Shown here piece by piece: positions 17,657-49,440 of a DNA stretch of 64,000 nt (positions are counted from its first letter, which is position 1; every line of letters begins with the position of its first letter). Made by a program: the position numbers and the translations under genes. Below the pieces are notes generated by a model. The model did no database searches, was not told the origin of the DNA, and saw only the letters and a list, made by a program, of their open reading frames with translations. The stretch lies in the IMG/VR virus record IMGVR_UViG_3300013120_000738, positions 1-64,000 of that record, one strand, 5' to 3'.

Positions 17657-17914
17657 CTAGGGATTTACTACCGCTTCAGCGTCTTCAGCTTCCTGACTAT
17701 CATAAATGACCCTAATCATCCGACGTTTCTGAAGGTTCTCGATCTGTTCCCACCGGAGGTGGCTGTGAGGAAGGAGAGTGTCCTGACCAGGTGCTAATCG
17801 CACCTGTGATTCACCAGTGTAGAAATCAGCTCCAGGTGGTCTGACCTGGAGAGGAATCATCTGTGTACCACAATTGTAGAGCCTCACCATTCGTGACTTT
17901 TCGGCCTTTGCCAT
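17657..17914 (-). CDS. Small tail-operon protein
   Basis: Lies between the gp15-like and sheath genes; paralogous to 44437-44667. Confidence 0.65.
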   Translation of the reverse strand: MAKAEKSRMVRLYNCGTQMIPLQVRPPGADFYTGESQVRLAPGQDTLLPHSHLRWEQIENLQKRRMIRVIYDSQEAEDAEAVVNP

Positions 17915-17973
17915 TGTCTAGTCTCCATTTCTGATCGTAGTTTGAAGCATACTTCCAATATCTACCGGGGGTA

Positions 17974-18846
17974 TCAATCACTAACAGTCTGAGTAGGTTC
18001 ATACCATAGATTACCACCAGCCCCAACCGATTGTGACTTAGAAGCAAGTAGTATATTACTAACCCGCTCCTTAAGCACTACAGTCCTACCAAGTACGGTC
18101 TTGACAATCTTCTCGGGCAACGGCAACCAAGCTTCAGCAGTACAATTAAATTCATAGCGTACTCTAGCAAGTTGATCAAACCCCGCCTCTTTATCACTTG
18201 CATCAGTAGAGCCGCCAAAACGTATTTGTACGCCACCCTCCAACTTGCCATCGAACATAATGAACTCAGCAAGCGGATTAAAACGTGTTAGCACTTGATA
18301 TAATATATACTCTGCATCCCTCTTACGTTCTGCCCAAATTATCAAATTATACTCAACAAGCCACGGAGTAGGCCGAAACACTAAAGCAATCTGATCATAT
18401 TGCTTGCTCAAATATCTCCCGGTCATAGCACCATATGGAGGACTATACTTCTCTGGATTGAATTCATGGCTCTCACGGCTTACCGCCGCCACAGGCAACC
18501 TAGCCCTACCCTCTTTCAGCTCATCAGCCCAAATCATAAGGCTCTTATCGCCACCAGCAACTTTCACCCGCATAAAACGATAATTGTCTTTAGTAGGCAC
18601 TCTTATACCAGACCAATATTGCTTCATAGCATAGTCTAGCGACCTAAACCCAGGAATTAAGAATTCCTCTAAATGTTCAGGATAGGATAGAAAATCAGTA
18701 CCATCAAACGGATTTCTACCGCCCTCGACATGACTAAGCTGCCTGACTGCAGGGACTTCACCAAGCCCAAACGGTACCTCCGTAGGCGGTGTTCGAAGTT
18801 TCTCACCCCTGACTGAGAAGTCAGCATCAAAATCATATACTGGCAT
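17974..18846 (-). CDS. Tail terminator / sheath stabiliser (gp15-like)
   Basis: P...EY.L.IW......A..I..Q+L..F.P pattern; position upstream of the sheath gene. Confidence 0.7.
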   Translation of the reverse strand: MPVYDFDADFSVRGEKLRTPPTEVPFGLGEVPAVRQLSHVEGGRNPFDGTDFLSYPEHLEEFLIPGFRSLDYAMKQYWSGIRVPTKDNYRFMRVKVAGGDKSLMIWADELKEGRARLPVAAVSRESHEFNPEKYSPPYGAMTGRYLSKQYDQIALVFRPTPWLVEYNLIIWAERKRDAEYILYQVLTRFNPLAEFIMFDGKLEGGVQIRFGGSTDASDKEAGFDQLARVRYEFNCTAEAWLPLPEKIVKTVLGRTVVLKERVSNILLASKSQSVGAGGNLWYEPTQTVSD

Positions 18847-19121
18847 TAACTTGCCTTCACTAACTCAATAAGTGCAAATGGTGGTCCGAGTTCTTTCAAT
18901 CGTGCTACAACTTTCGCCCTATCCTCCTCCGATTTGAATTCGTAAGTATGGGTTCTCTCCCTCTCCTTCCAATCAGTCTCTCTGCGCACAGCACTTGGTA
19001 CAGTTTTAGTGACTTCTCCAACAGCAGCCTTCTCAATTAAATTGAAAAATGCTGCATGGTCATTACTAATCTTATTTCTAAGATCACCAAGGGACCCGCA
19101 TTCTACCTTATCAGCCATCAA
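18846..19121 (-). CDS. Hypothetical protein
   Basis: ORF coupled to its neighbours. Confidence 0.55.
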   Translation of the reverse strand: MMADKVECGSLGDLRNKISNDHAAFFNLIEKAAVGEVTKTVPSAVRRETDWKERERTHTYEFKSEEDRAKVVARLKELGPPFALIELVKAS

Positions 19122-19744
19122 ATGCTTTCCCTATACTGACCACCGGTCTTGATTTGCTCCTCTGTTGGCATATCATCTTCAGGTCGCACTGCAATATCAG
19201 CAGTAAGGGTCTCAACCTGGCATGTATAATATAGCCAGATATAGCGAAAATTACCCGTAGGAGTACCATTAAGCACCCTAAAATTCCTTGGGTTGATCAT
19301 CGCTGCATTATATGGTAACTGAATCACATCACCACTACGAAGCATCCTATCTCCAAGTTTATCATAGATGCTCATATGGCTAAATGCTACTTCAGCAGTA
19401 TTCTTAGTATCTAAACCCCATTTCTCTAATTCCACTTGAATCGGTTCAGGCTTGAAAAAGGCCTTAATAGTAAATGCATTCCAATAAGTAGGATCTGGAT
19501 CTTCATCCCATACAGCATCATAATCAGCATTTTCAGTCCTGGTATAGACCTTAACCTCTGCACCACTTACGTTTATCATCTCCTCTGCCATCGTTCTAGC
19601 CAGTTTTACATCCCGGCTTTCTTCATCATGAATAGCAATAGGTGTATGATGCTGATCAATATCAGATCTAAAACTCTCCCAAGCAGAGCTAAATAAAGCA
19701 GGACTAACTTGACCGGTATCAATCGCAAATCTGTGTACGGACAT
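19118..19744 (-). CDS. Neck/head-closure protein (gp14-like)
   Basis: E.I...G..V..Y.R, KWGLD, GDVIQLPY. Confidence 0.7.
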   Translation of the reverse strand: MSVHRFAIDTGQVSPALFSSAWESFRSDIDQHHTPIAIHDEESRDVKLARTMAEEMINVSGAEVKVYTRTENADYDAVWDEDPDPTYWNAFTIKAFFKPEPIQVELEKWGLDTKNTAEVAFSHMSIYDKLGDRMLRSGDVIQLPYNAAMINPRNFRVLNGTPTGNFRYIWLYYTCQVETLTADIAVRPEDDMPTEEQIKTGGQYRESI

Positions 19745-19777
19745 ATCAATTCCTCTATAGTAGATTTGGAGAACGAG

Positions 19778-20077
19778 ATGGCCTTTTTACACTGTCACAA
19801 ATGCGGATGGGAACAAGATGACTTCTGGTCAGAGAATTATAATCCCATCAAATCACTACAAGACTGGATGAAAGATCTACTCACCAAAGACTTAGAAGAA
19901 GTATTTGGAACAGATGAATTTACTGGTTATACTGTAACATGGAGAGAATTACTCGCCAAAGAATGTGAAAAAGCAGCAAAAGCTATTCGAAATATGAAAT
20001 GGCGAACAGAGAAAGACTATAAAGAATCAGAAGACCAGACGTGTCCAAAGTGTGGTAGCCCACTAGATGTGGATTAG
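19778..20077 (+). CDS. Hypothetical Zn-binding protein, opposite strand within the structural operon
   Basis: CHKC and CPKC motifs, SD GGAG. Confidence 0.65.
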   Translation: MAFLHCHKCGWEQDDFWSENYNPIKSLQDWMKDLLTKDLEEVFGTDEFTGYTVTWRELLAKECEKAAKAIRNMKWRTEKDYKESEDQTCPKCGSPLDVD

Positions 20078-20583
20078 GTTCCACTAATACCCCATGGCGG
20101 AATAGGAGGTAGTACACCGACACCAGCCGGAAATTCACCCTCTTCTTTATAAGGACTACGAGGTGGGGCTTCTGTATCTTCAAAGTCTGGTGATGGGCAA
20201 TATCCCATCCCAATTATATCACATGAATCATAATCTTCCTCTACTGGCAATTCCTCACTAGCTAGATCCCTGAGCATTTGATAGTAATCTGGTTTGCTGG
20301 CACAAGGGCAATCAACGTCGACTGCAGGCAATACAAACCATTTCTGACGAATAGCCCCACGACCCCAGTTACTACCCCACTTTATCCATGAACCAGGAAT
20401 TGCGGCTAAGGCCTCCTCAAGATCAACAAGAGCACTACCGCAATTCTGTTGTGCTAACCAGCTTGAAAGTTTATTAGATGATAAGGCTGATGTAGGTTCA
20501 CACCCTGGCACGAGTATCTTGTTGGTGGGCAAGACCTCTAATTGTAGTGCGATATCTACAGGGTATCTAGTAGGCATTTTCAT
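20074..20583 (-). CDS. Hypothetical protein
   Basis: 169-aa ORF in the operon. Confidence 0.55.
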   Translation of the reverse strand: MKMPTRYPVDIALQLEVLPTNKILVPGCEPTSALSSNKLSSWLAQQNCGSALVDLEEALAAIPGSWIKWGSNWGRGAIRQKWFVLPAVDVDCPCASKPDYYQMLRDLASEELPVEEDYDSCDIIGMGYCPSPDFEDTEAPPRSPYKEEGEFPAGVGVLPPIPPWGISGT

Positions 20584-21419
20584 TCTTCCTCAAATATCTT
20601 TGTTGGGTCAACTGATGTTGTGCCAGTTAACACTATTGCAACAAAGCACATAGCTTCACAATATTGATATAAAGCTCTTAGTTTAGCCTGTACTCTATCA
20701 TCATTCAGCAACCTAGCAGCTTTCACTTCGACAATTAATATTTTATCAACTAATTTTATCATGAAATCAGGATAATAAATCCTTTTCTTTTCATCATGAA
20801 GATACTCGATCTTAATAGAATCTTTTGAAAAAGTTAGAACTCTATTATCGTTATCGAGGAATAATGCTACATCTTTTTCCCAACTGGAATGACACCAAAA
20901 AGCACCACCTTTTTTAGTTTCTAATCTACAACCACGTCTCCCCCGCATCCGTTTCTTACATGCTTGTTCAGAAGACATGTCAAAACCTTGAGATTCTTTA
21001 TATCTGCGAGCAGAGCACTCTAATCGTAATTTCTTAGATTTAGTTATAGCGAATTTTCTTAACCAATCACCAACACATTTAGAAGATACACCCAACTCAC
21101 TAGCAAGCTCGGTTCTAGATTTGTTTTGAATTATATAAGCATCGTACAGCCAATCTTTGTTGTTTAATTTACCAATCGCTTCTATTGATACAGAACGAAC
21201 AAATTTATCAAGATTAGATTTTTTAATATCACGCGGTCTGTAATTTATAGGTATATTGTGTCGTTTTAATGCAGAAACTACAGCCTTTTTACCACATCCT
21301 ACAAGAGCACCTATTTGTCTGGTAGAAAGAGCAGGATAATATCGCTCAAGCCAACTTTTATCTAATAAAAAATCTGCTGCTTCACCTAATTGTGCTTTAT
21401 AATTAGTAGGTATTTTCAT
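20580..21419 (-). CDS. TnsA/gp4-like PD-(D/E)XK endonuclease with N-terminal HTH repeats
   Basis: HSSWE, YYPDF, IVEVK; two HTH-like units (STRQIGALVGC, SRTELASELGVS). Confidence 0.75.
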   Translation of the reverse strand: MKIPTNYKAQLGEAADFLLDKSWLERYYPALSTRQIGALVGCGKKAVVSALKRHNIPINYRPRDIKKSNLDKFVRSVSIEAIGKLNNKDWLYDAYIIQNKSRTELASELGVSSKCVGDWLRKFAITKSKKLRLECSARRYKESQGFDMSSEQACKKRMRGRRGCRLETKKGGAFWCHSSWEKDVALFLDNDNRVLTFSKDSIKIEYLHDEKKRIYYPDFMIKLVDKILIVEVKAARLLNDDRVQAKLRALYQYCEAMCFVAIVLTGTTSVDPTKIFEEE

Positions 21420-22252
21420 ATAATATCTTTGATCAGAGAACCACCAAACATTAATATAGGCAATAATATATTCCAGATCAAAACCGGATATGGCTCTCCT
21501 AAATTAAGTGCTTTCTCTATAATTGTCTCTTTGACCGCATTTGCCTCTTGAACCAAATCGGAGCCATCATAATTAATAGAGCCCCCATCAGGTGTAGGCA
21601 TACCGGCAACCTTTCGTCTAGCCATCCCCACAGCATGTTTTACCTCAGCTTCCATCATCTCATAACAAATTGCTCTGGCCTGAGGACTCCGAAAATGATT
21701 GACTACCGGGATATACAGAATTACAACGGGGAATGCCCCCTTAGGTGTTGGGTAAAGCCTTATCAATTGATCTTTAGCATCGAGTGAATCACCCTCAACA
21801 TTCCCCTCTACCTCACCTATTACTTCCCAGTGTCCTTCCGTCCCAAGAACTTTTTGAGAGAACTTACGATACGACTGTAGTAAATGATAATCGGTAAGAA
21901 TATTCTGAATACCAGAAATATTACCAATATTAAACAAAAAGCTCTCAGCGCCGAAAACATCGTCTATTCTCGTCGTTACTGGATCCCAAGATACTTCCTG
22001 TACCCAATATGCGTCAGCCGGTAACGGATATGTGGACTGCAATGGAGTAGTCCAAAATAATGCTAATTTTTGTTCCCTCGGAAAATAACCAGAAATAAAA
22101 TCACCAGCAACCCGAAAAATCGTTTCCCATTGATCCTCAGTAATTTCTACTTCGGTTACGGGGAAGGCAAGCTTTGATAGGACATACTTTTTCATCGGCT
22201 CGCTTCGAACCTTCAAGACCGATGGTAGGTCTGCTGGTGCAAGTATGGCCAT
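21416..22252 (-). CDS. Neck/head-tail adaptor (gp13-like)
   Basis: KKYVLSKLAFPVTEVEITEDQ resembles the gp13 N-terminus; G..+NG..+..EA pattern at the C-terminus. Confidence 0.75.
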   Translation of the reverse strand: MAILAPADLPSVLKVRSEPMKKYVLSKLAFPVTEVEITEDQWETIFRVAGDFISGYFPREQKLALFWTTPLQSTYPLPADAYWVQEVSWDPVTTRIDDVFGAESFLFNIGNISGIQNILTDYHLLQSYRKFSQKVLGTEGHWEVIGEVEGNVEGDSLDAKDQLIRLYPTPKGAFPVVILYIPVVNHFRSPQARAICYEMMEAEVKHAVGMARRKVAGMPTPDGGSINYDGSDLVQEANAVKETIIEKALNLGEPYPVLIWNILLPILMFGGSLIKDII

Positions 22253-23334
22253 TATACCCTCATTAGACTCTCTTCAAGTTCTGTTTTCTTCCTGGCATAT
22301 CCTCGATATCCTCTGGCATGCTCATATATCTTCTTTAGTACGTCCCGCACACCTCTTATTTCTGACGATGGTATGTTGAATGAACGTGCTCCACCATGGG
22401 GAGCACTGCTTCCACCTTGTTTCTTTGCTACCTCTATGACATATTCAACAACATCATTACCCATAAGGTGTATATCTGTAACCAATGCGATCCCTTGCGT
22501 AGCATGTGCTACAACATCAACTGTATCTATAATCTCACCAATATGATCTAATGTTACATTTTCTACCTCAATTTTTTGTATTTGTGGCTGAATCCCACTA
22601 TACGAATAATCCTTCTCACCCAAACAAGCAATATGTATATCAGCCCCACCAGCTTCTTCCACTTCTTTAATCTTCGCAACTCTTGGTCTAGTCATACTGC
22701 CAGTAGCGGGTCGTTCCAATCTTAGCCAAGGACCATCATATGCTAGGGTCACACCTGTGATATATGAGTATCTCGTTCGGAACTTTCCACCATCAGTATT
22801 CAATAATTTCCCGAAAATATTAAACCCAAAATCACGTAATTCTTGGACTTTAGCAGCAAGTTCTTGATATTCAGGTCTTCTAAAAAATCTTACTAACCCC
22901 GCTAATGTCTCGGATGTTATAGCTTTTTCATATTCATAGCTAACTAGTTTACCATTAGGTTGTACAAATTGAAATCGATCTGTAAGGGCTTGGAAGAATC
23001 TTGGGAATCTAGTTTCAACACGCTTACATAATTCTTTTATCTTATCAATCGATGACCTATATCGTGCTGCTTCCAAATCGGATTCTTGTTGTCTTCTTCT
23101 GTCTGCTTCGATCTGAGTTGCTGTTCTGCCATAATTTCTTAAACTATCAAGAGCATAACGCATTTTTTGAAGATAATGAGAACCAGCACAAACTCCACCA
23201 GGTAACGTACCGAAATCAGCTTCTCGATAGTCCTCTAGCTGATCGATGATATCATCGAGCATTCGTTTTTCCTCGTCGCTAAACTGAGCTTCGAGGATTA
23301 AATTCAATTGATGCTCAAACGGTAGCCGTAGCAT
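22252..23334 (-). CDS. Hypothetical protein (possible capsid-internal)
   Basis: 360-aa ORF; N-terminus ends in LILE. Confidence 0.65.
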   Translation of the reverse strand: MLRLPFEHQLNLILEAQFSDEEKRMLDDIIDQLEDYREADFGTLPGGVCAGSHYLQKMRYALDSLRNYGRTATQIEADRRRQQESDLEAARYRSSIDKIKELCKRVETRFPRFFQALTDRFQFVQPNGKLVSYEYEKAITSETLAGLVRFFRRPEYQELAAKVQELRDFGFNIFGKLLNTDGGKFRTRYSYITGVTLAYDGPWLRLERPATGSMTRPRVAKIKEVEEAGGADIHIACLGEKDYSYSGIQPQIQKIEVENVTLDHIGEIIDTVDVVAHATQGIALVTDIHLMGNDVVEYVIEVAKKQGGSSAPHGGARSFNIPSSEIRGVRDVLKKIYEHARGYRGYARKKTELEESLMRV

Positions 23335-25288
23335 CTTCCAACCTCTGTAATCTTGCTAATTTCCGGTCGATAAGCTTCTTAACACCACGTGACTTAGTCA
23401 TGATTCTAAGTTCTCGTAGTTCAGCTGGATCATCGATCTCCAGTACTTCAGCTGTGTCAGCGGCTAGCTTAGCAGAAGTTCCCTTCAAAGTCGGATAAGT
23501 TATTTCTCCTTCTTTAGCCGTTATCTCTCTTATTCCAGCCATCATGTGTTTCAGCTTTGCATTAATAGATTTATTACCTATTCTATATAATTGAGACAGA
23601 TTCTCAAATTCAGTGCTGTAAACTATTGCATCAGCCACTGCGGATTCTATACTAAAATCTGGCGGCAAAAGACTTAGTATAGCAACCTTACTCTCAAAAT
23701 CTCCTTCAACAAGTTCACCTGTAAGCGAAGTAAGTATTAAATTAATCGTATTACTCCCAGCCTCGCTCTCAACAGCGGATCGCAATAACCTTGTCATATG
23801 ATCCAACGGGACATTCCCAAACATTACTGGAGCAATATCATTACTTAATGCGCCCTTTGCCATCATTTCATCGACTATATCTGCGAATCTATCATGCCTA
23901 CCAGGGAATGCCCCAATAGCGTGTTTATAATTTCTAAAAGCTGCGGCAAGATCCTCTACATCGATCTTCGATATATCGTCTATAAAGTCCTCAGGATGGT
24001 ATGCTGCATGTATAGTCAATAGGGCTGTACGCGGCAATTTACCTTCTTCAGCAAGTTGCAATGCTTTTTCCTCCGATATCTTGCGATATTTTATAGCCAA
24101 AGTAACAAATTCACCAGCGTCCCAGAGCCACCAGGCTCCTTGTTTTCCATAGTAATGGCCTTGTTGTTGTTTGGCGGCAGGATTATTATGTAAAAGAGCA
24201 AGTACCGTATCTTCGGTTAATCTCTTTACAATTTTCTCATCAGCATGCCTCATACCTTGTTTACTGATAATAGCATTCAAGTTCTCATCATTGAGCTTAC
24301 CAAGCAAATGAGCATTTTCTGTAATATCACCTTGGTATGATGTTATAAAATCATCTAATGGTATCTCAAGACGCCAGAAATCGGAATGATTGGTTATCTC
24401 TATTCCCTTCTTACGTATAAGAGTCCTAACAAAATCCATTATAGGTTCATGATATTTCTCAATTGGTGCTCTATTCTGCTTACCTTTAATTTCATTAACT
24501 GCCCACTTGCCAGAACCGGCATTTTTTGTGATTGACATACTAACATGCGGATTATTATATCTATTCCGCATGCTAAATATCTTAGTAGTATCACCTGGAT
24601 TACAGTACTTGCCGATGCAATTCTGCATCTTCACACCCTCGATGCGTGCATCGTCTTTTTTAACTGATATCCAGAAGAATGGACCAGATTTATGCACCGC
24701 TTGTTCAGGTCCTCGTACGTATTCCCCTCCTACTTTCTGATTAGCAAATTGTTGTTCATGCCATTGATGGGATGCCGCCTGCACATCCTGTAATGACATC
24801 TCTTTTAATTGATCGTCGGTAAGGCCTTCACCCTCAATATAATGAAACAATCCCTCATCAAATACTGCGTCAGGATCCTCTTTCTGGATCCTCATAATCC
24901 ATTGCCAGTACTTGGGGTGTACTTCCTTCGCTCTCCTCACCTCAGCAGCATACTTCAATTCTGCTTCGCTCTTCTCCCTCTTCTTAAAGGGATCTAGTTC
25001 TGCTACAGCTGCTAGAGAGTCTTGGTCAATCTTGTCGATGACACCTTGATTCAGACCTAGAACGAGTTTCTCAGCGTTCTTTCTATCCAGATCGATAGCT
25101 TGTTGGATAAGATCGGTATCCACCTCTGGATACTTTTTACTCAAATAATCAATCTGATCTTCAAGGAGTAATGTATCAAAGAAATGTTGGTCAAAGCCTT
25201 CAAACGGCAGTAAATTTATACCTTTTGGTTTTGATCTATTAATCTCACACAATTTATGACTTGATGATCTATACACATCATTTCTCAC
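23315..25288 (-). CDS. PcfJ-like domain protein
   Basis: EGVKMQNCIG.Y...IFSMR...PHVSMSI...EIKGKQNRAP. Confidence 0.7.
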   Translation of the reverse strand: MRNDVYRSSSHKLCEINRSKPKGINLLPFEGFDQHFFDTLLLEDQIDYLSKKYPEVDTDLIQQAIDLDRKNAEKLVLGLNQGVIDKIDQDSLAAVAELDPFKKREKSEAELKYAAEVRRAKEVHPKYWQWIMRIQKEDPDAVFDEGLFHYIEGEGLTDDQLKEMSLQDVQAASHQWHEQQFANQKVGGEYVRGPEQAVHKSGPFFWISVKKDDARIEGVKMQNCIGKYCNPGDTTKIFSMRNRYNNPHVSMSITKNAGSGKWAVNEIKGKQNRAPIEKYHEPIMDFVRTLIRKKGIEITNHSDFWRLEIPLDDFITSYQGDITENAHLLGKLNDENLNAIISKQGMRHADEKIVKRLTEDTVLALLHNNPAAKQQQGHYYGKQGAWWLWDAGEFVTLAIKYRKISEEKALQLAEEGKLPRTALLTIHAAYHPEDFIDDISKIDVEDLAAAFRNYKHAIGAFPGRHDRFADIVDEMMAKGALSNDIAPVMFGNVPLDHMTRLLRSAVESEAGSNTINLILTSLTGELVEGDFESKVAILSLLPPDFSIESAVADAIVYSTEFENLSQLYRIGNKSINAKLKHMMAGIREITAKEGEITYPTLKGTSAKLAADTAEVLEIDDPAELRELRIMTKSRGVKKLIDRKLARLQRLEDATATV

Positions 25289-25451
25289 GTCTTAATCGTC
25301 GTAATTCTGCAACCAAGCCTTCTTCGTCAGTTACTCCGACGTTCTCGACCTCATTCAAAACATCAAGAACTTCTTGTGGCGTTAATTCCTGTCCGTGTTT
25401 CTCTGCGATATACTGTCTGATGTATTGGAGATCCTCTTTAGCAATTTCCAT
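25278..25451 (-). CDS. 57-aa hypothetical protein (below ORF-track cutoff)
   Basis: Hand translation MEIAKEDLQYIRQYIAEKHG...LRREK fills the gap in the operon. Confidence 0.65.
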   Translation of the reverse strand: MEIAKEDLQYIRQYIAEKHGQELTPQEVLDVLNEVENVGVTDEEGLVAELRRLRREK

Positions 25452-25458
25452 AACGTAC

Positions 25459-26010: not shown

Positions 26011-26051
26011 GATAAGTATCCTCCATTAATATTTTTGTATGAAGAAAAAAC

Positions 26052-27079: not shown

Positions 27080-27104
27080 AATTTATCTCCCGATTTATAT
27101 ACAG

Positions 27105-27136: not shown

Positions 27137-27143
27137 TAATATT

Positions 27144-33794: not shown

Positions 33795-34772
33795 TTACCC
33801 TTTATTAATAGGGTTCTCCAAGTCTAGATCCATGGTTACCATCATCCGGATGAGTTCTTTAAAGCTTATTTCGGGCTCCCATCCGAGCTCCTTCTTAGCC
33901 TTACTAGGATTTGAATGCAATAAATTAACGTCAGCAGGCCTCAAAAATTTCGGATCAATCTCCACATATTCTTCATAATCCAGCCCAACACACTCGAATG
34001 CTAATTGGGCTAATTCTCGTACGCTATGTGTTTCACCGGAACCAATCACAAAATCCCCAGGCTCATCTTGTTGGAGCATCAACCACATAGCCCTAACATA
34101 ATCCTTAGCATGGCCCCAATCCCTCTTAGCATCCATATTACCAAGATATAACTTATCCTGCAACCCTAATGAAATCCTGGCAGCAGCTCTAGTGACTTTC
34201 CGTGTCACAAATTCATATCCGCGTCTTTCAGATTCATGATTGAATAATATACCATTACTGCAGAACATATCATAGCTCTGCCTATAATTTATAGTAGTCC
34301 AATATGCTGCCAACTTCGCAATAGCATATGGACTCCTCGGTCTAAATGGAGTATTCTCATCTTGTGGCGTCTCCGCTACATCTCCGTATAATTCACTACT
34401 ACTGGCCTGATAAAACCGCACATTCTTATCAACAAGTCGTATGGCTTCCAAGACCTTGAAAACACCTAAAGAATTGATACCAACAGTAGTGATAGGGTGA
34501 TTCCAACTAGCGGGAACAAATGATTGTGCTGCCAAGTTATACACTTCGTGGGGACGTATTTTATCGATCAATTTCATAACCGAAGATTGATCAGTAATAT
34601 CCCCAAAATGCATAGTGATTGAGTCAAGTATATGATTTATCCTAGCAGTATTCGGCGTACTAACACGCCTTGATGCACCATGTACATCGTAATCCTTTTC
34701 TAGTAAGAATTCCGCAAGGAATGATCCATCTTGACCAGTAATACCTAGAATCAATGCGCGTTTCTCAGACAT
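33795..34772 (-). CDS. gmd: GDP-mannose 4,6-dehydratase
   Basis: [48 protein letters not shown]. Confidence 0.95.
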
Positions 34773-34820
34773 AAGCTCCTCCAAAGATAGATTATGAAAT
34801 ATATACAACAGAGATAAATT

Positions 34821-40614: not shown

Positions 40615-40635
40615 AACAACCTCCGTAAATACCAT

Positions 40636-42285: not shown

Positions 42286-42300
42286 AATAAAATCTACAGT

Positions 42301-43140
42301 ATGAAATTAAGATTAATAGTTGAATACAAAGCAGTAACCCTGACAAAAGGGTTAATAGCACACTTCAAGAATGTGTTAGAGCCTATATTACCAAAGTTAT
42401 CACGTATCAAAGACATCAGATCTATAATTAGGTACATAAACGCCGCATTCGAAAAACAACCATTCCAAGACCGTAGGATCGTTTTTAATATACCAAGTAA
42501 AGAAGACCTCGTAGACCCATACCCGGAAGCTATAATACAAGGTAATGTAGATCCAGATAATCTCATTATTAATCTAACACCAGGTAAAATATTTATCGAA
42601 GCAATTCGAAATCAAGATATTGGGCCAATTCTTGCAAGTGTTAGGACCATTATAGGGCATGAAGACACACATGTTCAACAATTCGGTAATAAAGATTCCA
42701 AATTATCCAAAAACCTGACTAATGAGAAACACTGGAAAGCACTAGAAGAACTTGTAGGCGAGAATGGTGCTAAATTCTCTAGTATGATGTATGATGATCC
42801 ATCTAGCCTAGATGATCAACCAGCTATAAGAAAGATGATATCACAAAGGTACTATATTAACCTATCAGAATTGCCATCACACGCATATTCAGCAGTAGCA
42901 GAACTAGTCAATAGTGTAAAGAAAGAAATGCCAAACGCTAGACCACAAGAAGTACTACAAACAACTGACAAACTAATTAGGACACTAAAGGATGACCCCA
43001 CAAATAAAACAGTCGCTAATGCATCCAAAGCAGTGAAATTATATACACAAGGCGTCGCCAAGGATTTTCCAAAAGCTGTACCAAGCTTTATCAAGATGAT
43101 GGGGCAGACATTACGAAAATTAAGAGAAGAATTCTTCTAA
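42301..43140 (+). CDS. Zincin-like (HExxH) protein, possible capsid-internal
   Basis: IGHEDTHVQQ and YY...ELPSHA; MKLRLIVE N-terminus. Confidence 0.65.
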   Translation: MKLRLIVEYKAVTLTKGLIAHFKNVLEPILPKLSRIKDIRSIIRYINAAFEKQPFQDRRIVFNIPSKEDLVDPYPEAIIQGNVDPDNLIINLTPGKIFIEAIRNQDIGPILASVRTIIGHEDTHVQQFGNKDSKLSKNLTNEKHWKALEELVGENGAKFSSMMYDDPSSLDDQPAIRKMISQRYYINLSELPSHAYSAVAELVNSVKKEMPNARPQEVLQTTDKLIRTLKDDPTNKTVANASKAVKLYTQGVAKDFPKAVPSFIKMMGQTLRKLREEFF

Positions 43141-43273
43141 TGCGACTATCATTAATTACAGACGATACTACCAGACGCGACTTCTTAAAAAGAGAAAAGA
43201 ACGGGAAGAAGCAGACCGCTGGAAACCAGACCCCGCCGCATCAAGTATGCATCAACCATGGTTCGAATCAGTA

Positions 43274-43567
43274 CTAGAATCCCATCTCAGTTTCTATAAG
43301 TAATCTACCAGGTTTTGTCCCATCACTCTTCTGATATAAGTGGCTTCTATATTCATATACTTTACCGTCAAAATGAAGTTTCACACCACCTGTCATACCC
43401 TCCAGTCGCAGTGAAAAATCATTGCTTAAATCAGTCTCTGTTCCAACAACAGGAGCATTAGCTTCATCTATTCCAACTCCCTCTGGAAATAATATCAAAA
43501 AATATATAACCTTTTGCCCATTATGTTCTAATGGTTCTGGATTTTTATCTAGTCTATAATATCTCAT
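43274..43567 (-). CDS. Hypothetical protein
   Basis: 97-aa ORF. Confidence 0.55.
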   Translation of the reverse strand: MRYYRLDKNPEPLEHNGQKVIYFLILFPEGVGIDEANAPVVGTETDLSNDFSLRLEGMTGGVKLHFDGKVYEYRSHLYQKSDGTKPGRLLIETEMGF

Positions 43568-44412
43568 TCAATAAATCCCATTTTCTTATCTATAGACAAG
43601 CGTGCTTCTTTTATTCCAAATGATTTCACATGAATATTATTACCATCATCTGCTTCAAGTTCAGCCGAAACATAACTAGTTAACTCATTATCACACCAGT
43701 GCATATGTGTGCCAAGCATCTCTGGGAAACGCGATTTCCATTTATTATGTAATAATCTAAAGAATTGCCAATATCGACTCCTGCCAGCCATACTAGATGA
43801 ATATGCCCCATAATGAATTATAGGTAAGTCTGCCGCATACACACCAAATCCAGCCGCCCTCGCCTGCAAACACATATCGGCCCCATAAAAATGGAACCCA
43901 TTAAACATCGTATCAAACCGCAGTCCTGTTTTCTTATTAAGAATAAATAAGCATTCATCAACACAATGAACTCTTGTCGGCGACTTTAAACCATCCCAAT
44001 ATGGTTCCGAATCAACATCATCTGTATGCCAGACACTACCTACCGCCACAGTATCCAATAATACTGCACCACCCCATGGCCCTATATCTCGCCTCTCCCT
44101 ATTAAGATCTATCCCAGCAGCACCAAGTATTCCCCAATCTTTATCCAATTTCCCCAATGTCTCTTCCGCTATCGCAAACCAATCCTCTACGAGTGTAATA
44201 TCTTGGTGAGCAATAACCAGATTATCTGATCTTGCAACCTTAATTCCTAAATTTAGAGCAAGGCTAGCTGAATATAACCCACTATCATTTAGTACGGGAA
44301 TAATTTCTACGTCAAAATTACCACGGCACCGGTCTATTGAATCAAGCAAGCATTCTTGATAAATGTCCGGCTCAGAGATACAAGTAATAACAGAAAATAT
44401 AGGCATCATCAA
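43564..44412 (-). CDS. Glycosyltransferase-like protein (GT2-related, Glyco_tranf_2_5)
   Basis: S...ALN.GI..A..D.+V+.HQD, G+LGAAG, VDEC, FHFYGADMCLQ. Confidence 0.8.
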   Translation of the reverse strand: MMMPIFSVITCISEPDIYQECLLDSIDRCRGNFDVEIIPVLNDSGLYSASLALNLGIKVARSDNLVIAHQDITLVEDWFAIAEETLGKLDKDWGILGAAGIDLNRERRDIGPWGGAVLLDTVAVGSVWHTDDVDSEPYWDGLKSPTRVHCVDECLFILNKKTGLRFDTMFNGFHFYGADMCLQARAAGFGVYAADLPIIHYGAYSSSMAGRSRYWQFFRLLHNKWKSRFPEMLGTHMHWCDNELTSYVSAELEADDGNNIHVKSFGIKEARLSIDKKMGFIE

Positions 44413-44436
44413 AATTACAGTAAAGGAGAATGAATC

Positions 44437-44667
44437 ATGGCTACACGGGTAACTACCATCACCAATATTTCAACCCAGACAATACCTATCTTGCTGAACG
44501 CTATCGACCTCGATAAAGCGGCTGCAACATCGGATATTGATCCCACCCGTGCCGAGCAATTATCGATAGCGCCAGGTGCAGAACTAGTTATCGAGACACA
44601 AAGAATTGACATAGGTCAATTGGAACAACTACAGAGAAAGAATCTCATCACCTTTATTGGTTACTGA
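44437..44667 (+). CDS. Small protein paralogous to 17657-17914
   Basis: N.STQ.IP+...Q+.+APG...Q+E.LQ+K.LI. Confidence 0.7.
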   Translation: MATRVTTITNISTQTIPILLNAIDLDKAAATSDIDPTRAEQLSIAPGAELVIETQRIDIGQLEQLQRKNLITFIGY

Positions 44668-45128
44668 GTCACTAAAACAAACCTATCGTCTAGATATTGT
44701 CTCAATACGGGCAGCACTTGTTTAGGTCGCAATCTACCATTAGCACATCCCACCATCGGTAGAACAATCATATCGGCCTCTAATATATCTATTAACCTAG
44801 CTAATTGAATAGTAGATCTACGTATCAAATCGATATCCGAGTCCTGTTGCCAAGACAACCAGGGTTTATCCTCATCTAGTGGTTTAGTAGGAAATAATAT
44901 AAATTTCTTTTTCCTGTATGGTAGTGTTGCTGTATTAGCACCGAATTTTTGGCATTTCTTACCATACCATATAGGTAGATCTGGATCTATCCCAGCAGCA
45001 GCTCTGGCTATACCAGCACCCATAGGATTAGAACCGTCTTTCTTCCAACCGATGTTGGTAGTAATGACGATCCACTTCCTTCTGTCGTGGAAGTTCCAGA
45101 TGTTACCAACTCTCTCAATCATCAACAA
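44661..45128 (-). CDS. Macrodomain (ADP-ribose binding/hydrolase, DarG-like) protein
   Basis: GNIW, ITTN, MGAGIA, FPTK, LPMVGCANG.L. Confidence 0.8.
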   Translation of the reverse strand: MLMIERVGNIWNFHDRRKWIVITTNIGWKKDGSNPMGAGIARAAAGIDPDLPIWYGKKCQKFGANTATLPYRKKKFILFPTKPLDEDKPWLSWQQDSDIDLIRRSTIQLARLIDILEADMIVLPMVGCANGRLRPKQVLPVLRQYLDDRFVLVTQ

Positions 45129-45453
45129 TCAAGTCAAGAATTCGTGCAGGGTTTATTTTGTCATAATAACCGCAATGTGGCTTATCTGTACACTCCCGTA
45201 TGGTCTTCACAGCAGAACTTATAAAATGTAGAACATCAGCATCTGGATTACTGATCATTATTCCTTCATCTTTACCAAGATACACCGCGTATAAATAGTC
45301 ATCCTCTATAATAAATATTAATTTTCGCCATCTACCAAGACCATCTGTGACTTCTGATTTAACTATATCCGATGCCTCTTTGCGCACCGGCAATTTCATA
45401 CTTCGTAAGATATCGATCACAAGATCAGCAATCAATATGGTTGCTCCCCACAA
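45115..45453 (-). CDS. Hypothetical protein
   Basis: ORF in the operon. Confidence 0.5.
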   Translation of the reverse strand: MWGATILIADLVIDILRSMKLPVRKEASDIVKSEVTDGLGRWRKLIFIIEDDYLYAVYLGKDEGIMISNPDADVLHFISSAVKTIRECTDKPHCGYYDKINPARILDLIVDD

Positions 45454-46094
45454 AACTCATCAAAATCTATCTCAGTATCAGGATAATATAGATCGATTGC
45501 ATATTTCTCAGCATCTAATACACGCTGTAACAATTCTGGGGTATACTTTGCAAGTTGCTTAGATGACATCTCGCCCATAGACGAATCGTTTATTCTCCCA
45601 GCATCTATAAATTTCTGCTCATCGAATTCTACACCGGCATTCTGTAATATATTAGTAGCATCAGTTACCAAGTTCTCCATAGTACCAACGTTGATTTCTC
45701 CTGATGGTACTCTCTCAATATAGACCTTATATAAAGTTGATACCCAACCGGGTTTATGAATCAATAGATTATCGACCCACTCCCGAAAATCATTAGATGA
45801 GCAATTTCTATCTATCGGATGGCTCATATGCCACCCATGCTTAACCCTAAATGCCCATCTAGATTGATACCACGTAATCGGATGCCTAACAAAAGCAAAA
45901 TAATAAGCGGATTTAATAGTGTCCGGATTAATATGATTAGCTAGTTCTGGAAAATGCGAGTGTTGTTGCCCAACATGTGAGTATGGTTTACCGGTAGCCA
46001 GCTTAATAGCCTCACGGAACCACGATCCTCCAGTCTTAGGGATATGAAGAAATATCCATGTCCGTCCATCAGAACACTCGCCCATCAAAGCCAT
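45432..46094 (-). CDS. Sulfotransferase family protein
   Basis: FLHIPKTGGS (5'-PSB loop) and FVRHP..WYQS (3'-PB). Confidence 0.85.
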   Translation of the reverse strand: MALMGECSDGRTWIFLHIPKTGGSWFREAIKLATGKPYSHVGQQHSHFPELANHINPDTIKSAYYFAFVRHPITWYQSRWAFRVKHGWHMSHPIDRNCSSNDFREWVDNLLIHKPGWVSTLYKVYIERVPSGEINVGTMENLVTDATNILQNAGVEFDEQKFIDAGRINDSSMGEMSSKQLAKYTPELLQRVLDAEKYAIDLYYPDTEIDFDEFCGEQPY

Positions 46095-46276
46095 TACGAA
46101 GTCCTTCTTGTCAAAGCCTCTACCATATGCCTAGCTATTGCATCAAGGACATCCTCACCATCCTCGATCTTATGCCCAAAAACTTTGATGGCTTGGTCAT
46201 CATTCTCCACACTACCCCATTTATATTCGGTAATCTCGTCTAATCGGTTCCGAAACAATTCAAAAACGTCATCCAT
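46094..46276 (-). CDS. Hypothetical protein
   Basis: 60-aa coupled ORF. Confidence 0.5.
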   Translation of the reverse strand: MDDVFELFRNRLDEITEYKWGSVENDDQAIKVFGHKIEDGEDVLDAIARHMVEALTRRTS

Positions 46277-46283
46277 GATACAC

Positions 46284-47231
46284 CTACTCTATTATCTTCT
46301 CAGCTTCCTCCTCAAAACCAAGTGCAGTAAACATGGTGCTCATCCGATGGTGGTATGTATGGTGTTGTAAGACAGAATCTCTTTGTTTAGTAGCAAGAAG
46401 AAACCGCTCCTCCTCATTCTCAGGGCGACTATAATAAACACATCTTTCAAGATACTCTTCGGGAGTAGTAGCGATTACTATACCTTCGATAATCCTATCC
46501 AATCTTGGTACTGCATCATGTACCGCCAAAGCACCACATAGTGCTACTTTGAAAGCTCTTTCAGGTAGATCAATACCAAAACTTCTTGTATGCTGCTCCG
46601 ATATACAAGGTCCCACCTTGCCACTATTGAAGAACGCACATACTTTATCATCGGCTATAGCACCGCTAGAAATACCATCTGGCCAATCGCCCCAACCGTG
46701 CAGTTTATGTGTTATCTTGCCATTCTGCAACACCGGCATCAAGCATTCAGTTATTGTAATAGCCTTATATGGCCAGATACCACCAAGATAGACGACGTCG
46801 AATTTTCTTTCCCCGTCTAGTAATTTATATATAACCTTATCACCAGCTGTGGGCATAGGCACCCAAGTAATTCCGGCTTTCTGTGACCAATAAGACCATA
46901 GAATCCTATCAGAATCATATCCGTAACCGAATACTACATCGGGCTTTTGTTTACGCACCCAATTAATAGCATCTGTTGATTCTGATACCCCATCGATAGT
47001 GCTAGGACCCCATGGATTGACATGGATAGCTATCTTCGCACGCCTGTTTCTTGGTATTTCTTGCTTGTGGCCAGAACAACCCATATAAATATCTGGGTTA
47101 AAATCATCCCAGCTAGCCCTATCATTATTCCATCGGCGAACTTCATGCCCTTTATCACGAAGAGCATTGATCCAGCCATCTGAAATATAACCAAAAGCAC
47201 CACCAGGCCTGTGACATATAAGGACTCTCAT
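46284..47231 (-). CDS. GT-B glycosyltransferase (CgeB-like)
   Basis: DVVYLGG, LHG.GDW, ERAFKVALCGA, HTY.HR. Confidence 0.8.
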   Translation of the reverse strand: MRVLICHRPGGAFGYISDGWINALRDKGHEVRRWNNDRASWDDFNPDIYMGCSGHKQEIPRNRRAKIAIHVNPWGPSTIDGVSESTDAINWVRKQKPDVVFGYGYDSDRILWSYWSQKAGITWVPMPTAGDKVIYKLLDGERKFDVVYLGGIWPYKAITITECLMPVLQNGKITHKLHGWGDWPDGISSGAIADDKVCAFFNSGKVGPCISEQHTRSFGIDLPERAFKVALCGALAVHDAVPRLDRIIEGIVIATTPEEYLERCVYYSRPENEEERFLLATKQRDSVLQHHTYHHRMSTMFTALGFEEEAEKIIE

Positions 47232-47482
47232 TACTCACCATCTACAATAGTTGGGATTTGTTCTCTAGTAACAACAATATTTAGTTCTTCTGGGACCGCA
47301 TAAATCGTGTAACCAAGGCACGCATCAACCACAAAACGCCCTAGGCCTTGACCATGATCTGTTGGTGTAGAAACCACCACGCCAGTTATCTGATACTTAG
47401 CACAGAATCTAGCAGCATCACTGCTATTCAACTTACCATCGTCATCTAGTAGCCGGAATTTGACGATATCACCACTTTTCAT
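47231..47482 (-). CDS. Hypothetical protein
   Basis: 83-aa coupled ORF. Confidence 0.5.
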   Translation of the reverse strand: MKSGDIVKFRLLDDDGKLNSSDAARFCAKYQITGVVVSTPTDHGQGLGRFVVDACLGYTIYAVPEELNIVVTREQIPTIVDGE

Positions 47483-49440
47483 TTCGCATGCCTCTTTAAT
47501 AAATTGCCCCAGCCCTGTTCAACCAAACGTTTATGTTGCATTTTGACTCTTTTCTCAATCCCTAATACAACGAGATTTTTCTCTTTGATTTTATTAGTCT
47601 CATGATGCTCATTCCAGTATGGTACACGACCATGCCACAAATGCAAGAAATCGAAAATCCTATCCTCTTTCCAATCACTAGCTCCAGATAACCTAGCGTA
47701 GAAATCACAGTCCTCACATCCGTAACCCCAATAGTCTTGGCAAAATGCACCAACTCTCCAATATGCCTGAATAGTACACCCTACTGATCCACCTTCAAAA
47801 TATCCAACAACTCTATCACAATTTATATCATCATCCACTTTTCCTAAATCACATATACGATCTGTTGATTGCTTGTCGGCATAAACAACAGTACTACCAA
47901 GGTGGCATGATTCACGATCTTCCAAGATACGAGCAACAGATCTTGTATAATTTCCCTGAACAAGCAGATCAGCATCATGTAACACCACAGTCGGTGTAAT
48001 CACCTTCGATACACCTGTGTTAAAAGCTAATGACTTATTAAATAACGGATTCTGGGCGGTAACGTGGCAATAAGTAACAGGATTGAAGTTATCGAGATTT
48101 ATCTTGGTATTGGCATCTTGTTCAACAACTATAATATGAACAACAGGATATCGTTGTGCTCTTATATTATTGACAGCGGCTAAGATGCACTTTTCTCTGC
48201 CGGTATTTCTAAATGGTATTACATAAGATATTTCCGGCAATCTAGATCTTTCTGTTGGACCTATCCTCCTATAAGTTCTTTTAGCAAATATCTTCCTTCC
48301 TTCTCTGAGATGTGTACTTCTATCTTCCATAGCAGAAGTATCTTTATGGATCTTGAAATAAAGTTCTGACCCATCGACATCCCAAAATCCTGGATTTTGT
48401 AATTCAAATTCCCATGCCTTCTGAGACCAATCTACATGTTCCATTCCATATAGACCATATGCTTCATCAAAATAACCACATTTAACAAGCATTTCCCTCG
48501 AGAAAGCCAATACTGCACCATGTGGCTTTTCATCCACTACTCGCAGATTTAGGTTACCTCTTTTCTGCAATTTGCCTTCGCCAGCACCATACACACCAAC
48601 CTGTCTGTAAGAGAAATGGTGCATACCTGTCTCTATCATAGCGTCATGGTATAAAGTGTCCCAGCCCTTTCTTAAAACTTCAACATCATCATTTAGAATC
48701 ATACCGTAAGCAAATCTCGACAAGCACCGTATCAATCTATTACTATTGCCAGCTATACCTAACCTCTCTGAATTCTTAATAACCACAATATTATGATTGC
48801 TTGATAAATCATTCAGATATTGTACGGTTGGTTTATCAGTACTAGCGTCATCGCTGATAAAGAGGGTAGTTTTAGACAAATCAGTATTGGTGAGAATTGA
48901 ATTTACTAATCTCTTTAAACAATCTGCTCTATTATATGATAGTATTCCAATTCCTATATTATTACTTATTGGGAAGATATTGTTCTTTAAATTGGATTGA
49001 AGCAATCTATTTGCATCTACATTTACTCTTCTACCGACGACTTTTGATCTCTTCCTTTGTCGCGGTGCAGCCCTCTCTTGTCTAATTATACTACGAGCTC
49101 TTGATACTCTAACTGCTTTCCGTGCTTCTTGCCGGGCTTTTTTACGTTCTTGTAGTTTACTTCTTTCTTCCTGCAACTGAGATTGATCTGGAGTCTCTTT
49201 CTTCTCTTGCCTCCTAGTCTTTGTCTTACCTAATATCACTTTATTTCTAATCAAGGACTGCGGTTGTTTCATACGTTTATTTGGTGTTGATTCATTTACG
49301 AGTTTTATAAATCCTCTAGTCCTATATCGTTCAAAATATTCACCCAGCACTCTTTTCTGGCGTGGTCGCAGAATAATCTCCTTGCCATCGGGGCCTATAA
49401 GATGAACTGCATAATTATTGTGATTAATATATTCGGGCAT
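47479..49440 (-). CDS. Two-domain glycosyltransferase (GT2 + GT7-like) with N-terminal extension
   Basis: ILSYNR...DDAS...LNDD...FDE.YGLYG.EHVD; second domain IPFR...EQD...FNKS...N.G...HDAD...YWGYGCED.DF. Confidence 0.85.
   Translation of the reverse strand: MPEYINHNNYAVHLIGPDGKEIILRPRQKRVLGEYFERYRTRGFIKLVNESTPNKRMKQPQSLIRNKVILGKTKTRRQEKKETPDQSQLQEERSKLQERKKARQEARKAVRVSRARSIIRQERAAPRQRKRSKVVGRRVNVDANRLLQSNLKNNIFPISNNIGIGILSYNRADCLKRLVNSILTNTDLSKTTLFISDDASTDKPTVQYLNDLSSNHNIVVIKNSERLGIAGNSNRLIRCLSRFAYGMILNDDVEVLRKGWDTLYHDAMIETGMHHFSYRQVGVYGAGEGKLQKRGNLNLRVVDEKPHGAVLAFSREMLVKCGYFDEAYGLYGMEHVDWSQKAWEFELQNPGFWDVDGSELYFKIHKDTSAMEDRSTHLREGRKIFAKRTYRRIGPTERSRLPEISYVIPFRNTGREKCILAAVNNIRAQRYPVVHIIVVEQDANTKINLDNFNPVTYCHVTAQNPLFNKSLAFNTGVSKVITPTVVLHDADLLVQGNYTRSVARILEDRESCHLGSTVVYADKQSTDRICDLGKVDDDINCDRVVGYFEGGSVGCTIQAYWRVGAFCQDYWGYGCEDCDFYARLSGASDWKEDRIFDFLHLWHGRVPYWNEHHETNKIKEKNLVVLGIEKRVKMQHKRLVEQGWGNLLKRHAK

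What the first reader, a model, noticed from the sequence alone, without database searches (positions are those of the whole stretch)
17657..49440. A small tail-operon domain recurs as a stand-alone paralogue and at the N-terminus of a glycosyltransferase
Seen by manual alignment. 17657-17914: RLYNCGTQMIPLQVRPPG...QVRLAPGQDTLL...EQIENLQKRRMIRVIYD. 44437-44667: TITNISTQTIPILL...QLSIAPGAELVI...QLEQLQRKNLITFI. First about 50 aa of the 653-aa GT: EYINHNNYAVHLIGPDG-KEIILRPRQKRVL-GEYFERYRTRGFIKLVNE. The shared pattern is N, hydrophobic strand, P.G, +.L.P.Q..+L, E.+E.+..R.+I. One copy sits between the tail terminator and sheath genes, one inside the glycan gene cluster. Inference: a virion-docking module that targets a glycosylating enzyme to the particle. 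The first two are clearly similar; the GT match is weaker.
Basis: partly seen in the sequence, partly recalled or inferred. Interest (0 to 1): 0.72.

Follow-up and report, generated by a model that had tools for sequence, protein, structure and literature searches.

The report
Small phage adaptor domain; glycosyltransferase look-alike
Two small proteins of this jumbo phage are true relatives from a large unnamed phage family, one of them fixed between the tail-terminator and sheath genes, while the first 50 residues of a big glycosyltransferase form a separate mini-domain that is predicted to have the same fold but shows no significant sequence kinship, so the idea of a shared "docking module" stays untested.

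Summary

**The two small proteins.** The 85-aa ORF (17657-17914, -) and the 76-aa ORF (44437-44667, +) are real paralogues: BLASTP E 6e-8, hhalign 92.5%. They belong to a phage-only family of at least 227 clusters with no Pfam or PHROG model. Each of five complete related jumbo genomes has exactly two copies. The first type always lies between the gp15-like terminator and the sheath (9 of 9 places). The second is a lone opposite-strand gene in the glycan cluster, close to the dual-GT2 gene.

**Fusions.** The domain also heads lectin-like, LRR and protease proteins. No glycosyltransferase fusion was seen.

**The glycosyltransferase N-terminus.** Residues 1-50 form a conserved mini-domain, present in all 63 related loci. 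An 80-180 aa basic disordered linker follows it.
- Sequence link to the family is not significant: HMMER finds nothing, hhalign P about 0.02.
- AlphaFold models of both have the same strand-helix order.
- They share the same best structural neighbours: GINS B-domain, YqbF, lambda gpFI-C.

**Verdict.** Same fold class is likely, common ancestry is possible, and the virion-docking function is unproven.

The parts
17657..17914 (-). P0001, 85 aa. Tail-block member of the small-domain family. Predicted order: b1 9-14, b2 20-24, loop, b3 37-40, b4 45-49, helix 55-63, b5 67-72, C-terminal helix.
   Evidence: Translation. 15 close homologues. AF2 pLDDT 82. Found directly after the gp15-like gene and before the sheath in 9 of 9 places.
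44437..44667 (+). P0002, 76 aa. Paralogue of P0001, a lone + strand gene inside the - strand glycan cluster. AAGGAG ribosome-binding site 8 nt upstream of the ATG.
   Evidence: Position and orientation conserved in L067-L069, in 19 of 63 GT loci within 3-kb flanks, and in 4 of 5 complete genomes within 7 kb.
49291..49440 (-). N-terminal mini-domain (residues 1-50) of the 653-aa glycosyltransferase. Predicted b-b-b-b-helix-b. Conserved positions N6, L14, L32, Y39.
48961..49290 (-). Low-complexity basic linker of the glycosyltransferase (about residues 51-160, pI 12, net charge +24).
   Evidence: Translation. The linker is sequence-divergent but basic (pI 10-12) in 44 of 45 orthologues.
47479..48960 (-). 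Two GT2 (GT-A) catalytic domains of the same protein (about residues 165-380 and 404-620; the second carries a Glyco_transf_7C match).
   Evidence: PF00535 E 1e-20, PF02709, PF13641, PF10111. phrog_2456 and phrog_1579.
17974..18846 (-). T4 gp15-like tail terminator / sheath stabiliser, immediately upstream of P0001.
   Evidence: PF16724 E 2.4e-5, 24.1 bits, just under the cut-off. Orthologues carry the precomputed PF16724 hit.
14737..17613 (-). Tail sheath, 958 aa, immediately downstream of P0001.
   Evidence: phrog_23 E 1e-80; PF17482 and PF04984.
43564..47482 (-). Remainder of the glycan cluster around P0002: GT2_5 (43564-44412), phosphatase-like (44661-45128), sulfotransferase (45432-46094), GT1-like (46284-47231), conserved 83-aa ORF (47231-47482).
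   Evidence: The same gene order is seen in L067-L069.

Best explanation
P0001 and P0002 are paralogues of a large, so far unnamed family of 65-110 aa phage proteins. They fold into a small b4-alpha-b domain of the GINS-B / YqbF-N / lambda gpFI-C kind, which in solved cases acts as a protein-protein adaptor.

One subfamily (P0001) is a fixed element of the neck-tail gene block, in the order gp15-like terminator, small protein, sheath. Its start often overlaps the terminator's stop, so it is most likely made together with the terminator and sheath and acts on or with them (inferred). The second subfamily (P0002) is kept as a separately oriented gene beside the glycan enzymes. Elsewhere the same domain is the N-terminal head of lectin-like, LRR and protease proteins and occurs in tandem arrays, which is the behaviour of a tethering module (shown as architecture, function inferred).

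The glycosyltransferase carries at its N-terminus its own conserved 50-aa domain of the same predicted fold class, joined to two GT2 catalytic domains by a long basic disordered linker. The most likely reading is that this head tethers the enzyme to a protein partner in the infected cell, possibly an assembling virion part or a P0002-like protein, while the linker gives the catalytic domains reach (inferred).

Whether the GT head descends from the P0001/P0002 family or only shares the fold is open.
For: **Paralogy.**; the family has 227 clusters at E<=1e-3.

**Copy number.** Exactly two family copies and one GT head in each of 5 complete genomes of 320-408 kb.

**Synteny of the P0001 type.** 9 of 9 places, with overlapping stop and start in four.

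**Positional analogues.** SP-15 SP15_042 matches the family profile at hhalign 71%, P 3.8e-5. Mu gp38 holds the same position.

**Fusions.** P0089 (Laminin_G_3), P0112 (DUF285), P0173 (trypsin-like), and tandem copies.

**GT head.** Present in all 63 related loci.

**Fold.**
- The two AF2 models have the same order of elements.
- Both map onto the same residues of Sld5, Gins51, YqbF and gpFI-C.
- 10 of the top 50 among 48,161 chains are shared in a Foldseek-independent search.
- 4 of the top 30 among 2.3 million AFDB clusters are shared, including rank 2 for both.
- SP15_042 itself is a BFVD neighbour of the GT head.

**Sequence with structure.** With the models' secondary structure added, hhalign rises to 20.8%, P 0.0025. 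The GT's four conserved positions N6, L14, L32, Y39 align to the family's conserved N14, L22, L48, L61.
Against: - No significant sequence or profile similarity links the GT head to the family.
- The two models could not be superposed on each other directly.
- No glycosyltransferase fusion of the family appears in the top 150 hits.
- There are no virion proteomics for any member.
- Mu gp38 was not resolved in the virion maps.
Confidence: 0.5

Rival explanations
1. The GT head is unrelated to P0001/P0002, and the resemblance is convergence on a very common small beta fold. Together with the strongly basic linker, it tethers the enzyme to nucleic acid or to the replication machinery, and the enzyme modifies DNA rather than virion proteins.
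For: The sequence link is not significant. The head's best structural matches are replisome parts: GINS B-domains and the primase PriS C-terminal domain. The linker has pI 10-12 in 44 of 45 orthologues. The cluster lies near an NAD-dependent DNA ligase, and a Mom-like gene lies nearby in a related phage. GT-A fold phage enzymes can glycosylate DNA (bioRxiv 10.1101/2023.12.21.572611).
Against: No ThyA-like pyrimidine hydroxymethylase is found in this record or in five complete relatives. The neighbours are a sulfotransferase, GDP-mannose dehydratase and GT1/GT2 enzymes, which look like glycan building rather than base modification. The second GT2 domain carries a Glyco_transf_7C match, which I know from polymerising and protein-directed enzymes (my knowledge). 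The shared structural neighbours and the coinciding conserved positions would need explaining.
Confidence: 0.25
2. The P0001-type protein is not a virion part but a transient assembly or regulatory factor for the terminator and sheath, for example controlling sheath polymerisation or capping. In that case the family's domain is not a virion-docking module.
For: Mu gp38, which has the same gene position, is listed as only a 'probably structural' protein and was not resolved in 3.3-3.8 A virion maps. The protein is small, and translational coupling to the terminator gene is compatible with a chaperone. The TRAP fold scores nearly as high as GINS for P0001.
Against: The domain heads lectin-like, LRR and protease proteins, which fits an anchor better than a chaperone. 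An Achromobacter phage protein annotated 'virion structural protein' is among the BFVD neighbours of the GT head. Absence from symmetrised maps does not exclude low-occupancy or flexible components.
Confidence: 0.3
3. P0002 is a partner or acceptor of the glycan enzymes: a small subunit that pairs with the GT head (like with like), or a protein that is itself glycosylated. This would explain its conserved place beside them.
For: It is linked to the GT gene and on the opposite strand in 19 of 63 loci within 3 kb and in 4 of 5 complete genomes within 7 kb. It has its own ribosome-binding site. In a related phage, the corresponding place near the DNA ligase gene is taken by a fusion of this domain with an LRR protein.
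Against: No test of binding was run for this pair. Linkage is absent in one complete genome, G005. Linkage alone is weak evidence.
Confidence: 0.15

Closest known systems
GINS B-domain (Sld5, Psf1, archaeal Gins51 C-terminal domain)
   Different: No sequence or Pfam match. The context is a phage tail block and glycan cluster, not a replisome. P0001 has a 12-residue insert between b2 and b3 and an extra C-terminal helix.
B. subtilis prophage protein YqbF N-domain (PDB 2hjq) and lambda gpFI C-terminal domain (PDB 2lsm)
Mu gp38 (DUF2635) and SP-15 SP15_042
   Same: Small genes in exactly the same place, between the tail terminator and the sheath. SP15_042 matches the family profile at 71% probability and is a structural neighbour of the GT head. 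A DUF2635 protein is also a BFVD neighbour.
   Different: The DUF2635 HMM does not hit P0001, P0002 or the GT head. The function of both proteins is unknown, and gp38 was not seen in Mu virion maps.
Pfam DUF7444 and DUF6385
   Same: These are the only Pfam models that family members touch: 7 of 149 members each, with best E 0.0056 and 0.033. Four longer family proteins outside that alignment (P0062, P0077, P0094, P0117) also touch DUF7444, best E 0.0015. A DUF7444 cluster is a structural neighbour of the GT head.
   Different: All hits are below the curated cut-offs. The DUF7444 HMM hits only one P0002-type gene in five genomes, at 15.3 bits, and never the GT head.
Virion glycosylation in mycobacteriophages (Freeman et al. 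2023, as cited in PMC12619734)
   Same: Phage-encoded glycosyltransferases that decorate capsid and tail-tube proteins.
   Different: To my knowledge no docking domain is described for those enzymes. No glycosylated virion protein is known for this phage.

Membership tests
P0001/P0002 small-protein family (unnamed) | Significant profile match over the whole 65-75 aa domain, including the N-x-S-x-Q ... Q-x-x-N-L-x-x-x-G-x-I signature | tested here: met
   P0001 and P0002 match: E 9e-34 and 2e-25 to the 149-member profile (which includes them), pairwise E 6e-8, hhalign 92.5%. The GT head is not matched at E<=10.
P0001/P0002 small-protein family (unnamed), applied to the GT N-terminal domain | Profile-profile similarity above chance | tested here: not met
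   hhalign probability 0.3-2.3%, P 0.02-0.22. 1 of 99 column shuffles reached the score. With secondary structure added: 20.8%, P 0.0025.
GINS B-domain-like fold | b-b-b-b-helix-b topology of about 50 residues, superposable on solved B-domains | tested here: inconclusive
GINS B-domain Pfam families (SLD5_C, PSF1_C, Gins51_C) | HMM match above the gathering score | tested here: not met
   No such Pfam hit at E<=1 for P0001, P0002 or GT residues 1-70. None in the profile-against-PDB sequence searches.
DUF7444 (PF24231), DUF6385 (PF19912), DUF2635 (PF10948) | HMM match above the curated cut-off | tested here: not met
   Only sub-threshold hits. DUF2635 gives no hit at all.
Glycosyltransferase family 2 (GT-A), for the 653-aa protein | PF00535-type domain above cut-off, with acidic DxD-type motifs | tested here: met
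   PF00535 scores 74.7 bits against a cut-off of 23.3, with two stretches; PF13641 and PF02709 are also above cut-off. 'SDDAS' and 'HDAD' motifs are visible in the translation. Catalysis was not tested.
Virion structural protein or virion-docking module | Presence in purified particles, or binding to a virion protein | not testable with these tools
   No cultured relative and no proteomics. Complex prediction of the gp15-like protein with P0001 gave no answer. Mu gp38 was unresolved in virion maps.
T4 gp15 tail sheath stabiliser (the neighbour 17974-18846) | PF16724 match above cut-off | tested here: inconclusive
   24.1 bits against a cut-off of 25 in the window. Orthologues at 39-63% identity carry the precomputed PF16724 hit.

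The most novel reading that the evidence does not exclude
A widespread, undescribed phage adaptor domain (GINS-B-like, at least 227 clusters) has a fixed site on the neck-tail junction. Jumbo phages use it, stand-alone or fused, to hang cargo on the particle or on its assembly intermediates: lectin-like and LRR adhesins, a protease and, in a diverged form, a bifunctional glycosyltransferase. The virion would then be glycosylated, possibly with a sulfated glycan, by an enzyme docked on its own substrate.
Probability: 0.15. Interest if true: 0.8.

Novelty: new variant of a known kind. Interest (0 to 1): 0.45.

Why it matters
If the domain is a tether, it gives a handle on three things:
- an unannotated protein that sits between the terminator and sheath genes in many myoviruses (Mu gp38, SP-15 gp042, this family);
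- how jumbo phages attach accessory enzymes and adhesins;
- how a phage glycosyltransferase finds its target.

It would also supply a small portable module for displaying cargo on phage tails. If the GT head is only a fold look-alike, what remains is more modest: a new, large and clearly defined family of small neck-tail proteins that deserves a family model and a virion-proteomics check.

Tried and rejected
**Searches of cultured and GenBank phages.**
- tblastn of P0001, P0002 and three diverse family members (P0045, P0154, P0071) gave nothing, or a single E 0.03 hit.
- PHROGs has no family for either small protein or for the GT head.

**Stand-alone copies of the GT head.** A profile search found only two short fragments that look like truncated glycosyltransferases. 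No extra copy is present in the own record or in five complete genomes.

**Family models.** The DUF7444 and DUF2635 HMMs run on the genomes gave only one sub-threshold P0002-type hit and none, respectively.

**Complex prediction.** gp15-like (9-row alignment) with P0001 (149 rows) scored 0.00 and returned no verdict. This is neither support nor evidence against.

**Other small ORFs of the two clusters.** The 83, 97, 112, 91 and 60 aa ORFs show no relation to either profile.

**Promoter and terminator scan around P0002, and k-mer enrichment upstream of genes.** Nothing above shuffles and no shared motif, so expression timing could not be inferred.

**Close-relative scan for the gp15-like gene.** It found only near-identical contigs.

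**DNA-modification reading of the cluster.** No ThyA-like gene is present. The TET/JBP search was uninformative because its controls did not ring.

**'Moraphage' lineage paper (PMC12619734).** Its genomes reach only 307 kb, and membership of this phage could not be judged.

**Partial hits to giant Ig-repeat (ASH/Cep192) proteins.** These cover only the first half of the domain and were set aside as analogous beta-strand motifs.
Full report
**What is there**

The window is the first 64 kb of a 227.7-kb viral record (CheckV 63% complete), a jumbo myovirus with no close cultured relative.
- P0001 is 85 aa, at 17657-17914 on the - strand.
- P0002 is 76 aa, at 44437-44667 on the + strand.
- The third is residues 3-50 of the 653-aa protein at 47479-49440 on the - strand.

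P0001 lies between a 958-aa sheath gene (phrog_23 E 1e-80) and a T4 gp15-like terminator / sheath-stabiliser gene. Two gp19-like tube genes follow downstream.

P0002 lies between a GT2_5 gene and a phosphatase-like gene. The cluster also holds a sulfotransferase, a GT1-like gene, a conserved 83-aa ORF and the 653-aa enzyme. A GDP-mannose 4,6-dehydratase and an NAD-dependent DNA ligase lie nearby. P0002 is on the strand opposite to all its neighbours and has an AAGGAG site 8 nt before its ATG.

**The two small proteins are real paralogues of a large family**

BLASTP of P0001 against P0002 gives E 6e-8, with 25% identity over 72 residues. Each has its own set of conserved homologues, 15 and 13 proteins of constant length. 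The two profiles match at 92.5% probability, E 4.8e-7.

A merged profile searched against 1.84 billion representatives found 227 proteins at E<=1e-3 and 60 at E<=1e-10. Most are 67-110 aa long. Conserved positions are N14, Q18, Q57 and L61 in P0001 numbering.

No Pfam or PHROG family covers them. A few members touch DUF7444 or DUF6385 below threshold. No GenBank phage has a BLAST-detectable member.

**Copy number and synteny**

Five complete relatives (320-408 kb, 98-100% complete) each hold exactly two family copies and one GT head.

The P0001 type follows the gp15-like gene directly and precedes the sheath in all nine places examined. These include phages whose copy is only 34-41% identical to P0001. 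In four of them its start overlaps the terminator's stop codon.

The P0002 type sits 1-7 kb beyond the GT gene on the opposite strand. This holds in contigs L067-L069, in 19 of 63 GT loci within the 3-kb flanks fetched, and in 4 of 5 complete genomes.

**Fusions**

The domain heads several longer proteins:
- a 300-aa Laminin_G_3 (lectin-like) protein;
- a 736-aa DUF285 (LRR) protein, which lies near the DNA ligase gene and opposite in strand to most of its neighbours, much as P0002 does;
- a 441-aa protein with a trypsin-like domain;
- proteins carrying two or three tandem copies.

No glycosyltransferase fusion is among the best 150 hits.

**The glycosyltransferase**

Pfam finds two GT2 domains, at about residues 165-380 and 404-620. 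The second carries a Glyco_transf_7C match.

All 63 related viral loci keep the N-terminal segment. An alignment of 46 distinct N-termini shows a 50-residue domain with N6 invariant and L14, L32 and Y39 nearly so.

Between this head and the first catalytic domain lies an 80-180 residue low-complexity linker. Its sequence drifts freely, but it is basic (pI 10-12, net charge +7 to +26) in 44 of 45 orthologues.

**Is the head related to P0001/P0002? Sequence says not significantly**

- BLASTP finds nothing.
- HMMER profiles do not cross-hit, even at E 10 with filters off.
- hhalign gives probability 0.3-2.3% and P 0.02-0.22 with three versions of the family profile.
- In a column-shuffle null, 1 of 99 shuffles reached the observed score.
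- Unrelated small ORFs of the window reach P 0.07-0.35 against the GT profile.

**Structure says probably the same fold class**

AlphaFold2 models built from the alignments are confident (pLDDT 82 and 81) and have the same order of elements. P0001 has a 12-residue loop between b2 and b3, a longer helix and an extra C-terminal helix.

Foldseek and VIA-align place both models on the same solved domains and the same residue ranges: Sld5, Psf1 and Gins51 B-domains, YqbF, and the lambda gpFI C-domain.

In a Foldseek-independent scan of 48,161 chains, the two top-50 lists share ten entries: 8ouw_D, 7pfo_G, 1zt2_A, 3anw_A, 5ghr_B, 2hjq, 9moj_D, 2lsm, 8xt7_A and 3gf5_A. Among 2.3 million AFDB clusters the two top-30 lists share four entries, including rank 2 in both. 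ESM Atlas gives the same picture.

With the models' secondary structure added, hhalign rises to 20.8% probability, P 0.0025, over 56 columns. The four conserved GT positions then align with conserved family positions: N6 with N14, L14 with L22, L32 with L48, and Y39 with L61.

**A bridge from cultured phages**

In Bacillus phage SP-15, whose sheath is the best cultured match to this one, a 76-aa gene (SP15_042) lies directly before the sheath gene. It matches the family profile at 71% probability, P 3.8e-5, over the helix-b5 motif. It is the same UniProt entry (A0A127AYN4) that appears among the BFVD neighbours of the GT head.

Phage Mu has gp38 (DUF2635) in the same slot, and a DUF2635 protein is also a BFVD neighbour. 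The DUF2635 HMM does not hit this phage.

The Mu virion study lists gp38 as only 'probably structural' and could not resolve it (PMC11915804).

**Function**

The following points are shown:
- the paralogy;
- the family's size;
- its two fixed genomic settings;
- its use as an N-terminal head of multi-domain proteins;
- the GT's head-linker-catalytic architecture.

The following are inferred:
- the domain is a protein-protein tether;
- the P0001 type acts at the terminator-sheath junction;
- the GT head tethers the enzyme to a partner.

The virion-docking reading has indirect support. It fits the fusions, the tail-block position, the gpFI-C and YqbF relatives, and an Achromobacter phage 'virion structural protein' among the BFVD neighbours of the GT head. 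The Mu result counts against it. A complex prediction of the gp15-like protein with P0001 returned no verdict.

A DNA-directed rival rests on the basic linker, the replisome-like fold neighbours, the ligase nearby, and the fact that GT-A phage enzymes can glycosylate DNA. It is weakened by two things: no ThyA-like hydroxymethylase is present in this record or in five complete relatives, and the neighbours are glycan-building genes.

**Verdict**

The small-protein paralogy is solid and opens a sizeable unannotated family. The GT match is a likely fold-level resemblance (about 0.7 in my judgement), with common ancestry possible (about 0.4) and a virion-docking function unproven (about 0.25). I file it as a new variant of a known kind: small phage adaptor domains of the GINS-B / YqbF / gpFI-C type.

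Noticed in passing
window 45432-46094, 47479-49440, 33795-34808: A Sulfotransfer_2 / galactose-3-O-sulfotransferase-like gene sits beside a two-domain GT2 enzyme that carries a Glyco_transf_7C match, with a GDP-mannose 4,6-dehydratase nearby. Together these suggest the phage builds a sulfated glycan, which would be unusual for a phage.
   Followed up: partly
window 48961-49290 (GT residues about 51-160) and orthologues L004-L065: The linker of the glycosyltransferase is free to change in sequence and length (80-180 aa) but is kept strongly basic (pI 10-12) in 44 of 45 orthologues. It ends in a conserved IVG[RK] motif. The charge itself appears to be under selection.
   Followed up: partly
window 20580-21419 (-): An ORF with HNH-endonuclease, TnsA-like nuclease and HTH matches lies inside the neck gene block; its C-terminal part also matches a 'head closure' PHROG. 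It looks like a homing-endonuclease-type insertion. Relatives G003 and G005 have an extra 1-1.5 kb between the P0001-type gene and the sheath (L085, L087).
   Followed up: no
window 14737-17613 (-): The sheath protein is 958 aa, but only the last 300 or so residues match sheath families. The N-terminal 650 or so residues have no family match.
   Followed up: no
window 13488-14114 and 14124-14726 (-): Two adjacent gp19-like tail tube paralogues. A related contig (L073) has three.
   Followed up: no
L072:4063-6273 (contig QXGG01038517.1): In a related phage, a 736-aa protein with the P0002-type domain at its N-terminus, DUF285 LRR repeats and a Ser/Thr/Gly-rich tail lies near the DNA ligase gene, next to a Mom-like gene, and opposite in strand to most of its neighbours. 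The setting resembles that of P0002.
   Followed up: partly
proteins P0133 (1339 aa) and P0135 (2883 aa): The family profile gives 12-15 partial matches, covering the first half of the domain only, to giant proteins made of ASH/Cep192/HYDIN-type Ig-like repeats. The 'N-x-S-x-Q-x-[IV]-P' strand motif resembles that of PapD/MSP-like sandwiches. This is probably analogy.
   Followed up: no
window about 56597-56650: A short run of GAAACTGAAA-like repeats lies directly upstream of the ORF 55556-56596 (-). It was seen only in a listing of upstream regions.
   Followed up: no
L091 (phage Mu NC_000929) 1455-2003: The RefSeq record labels Mup37 'portal protein', whereas the Mu cryo-EM paper (PMC11915804) identifies gp37 as the tail terminator and gp29 as the portal. 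This is an annotation slip in the public record.
   Followed up: no
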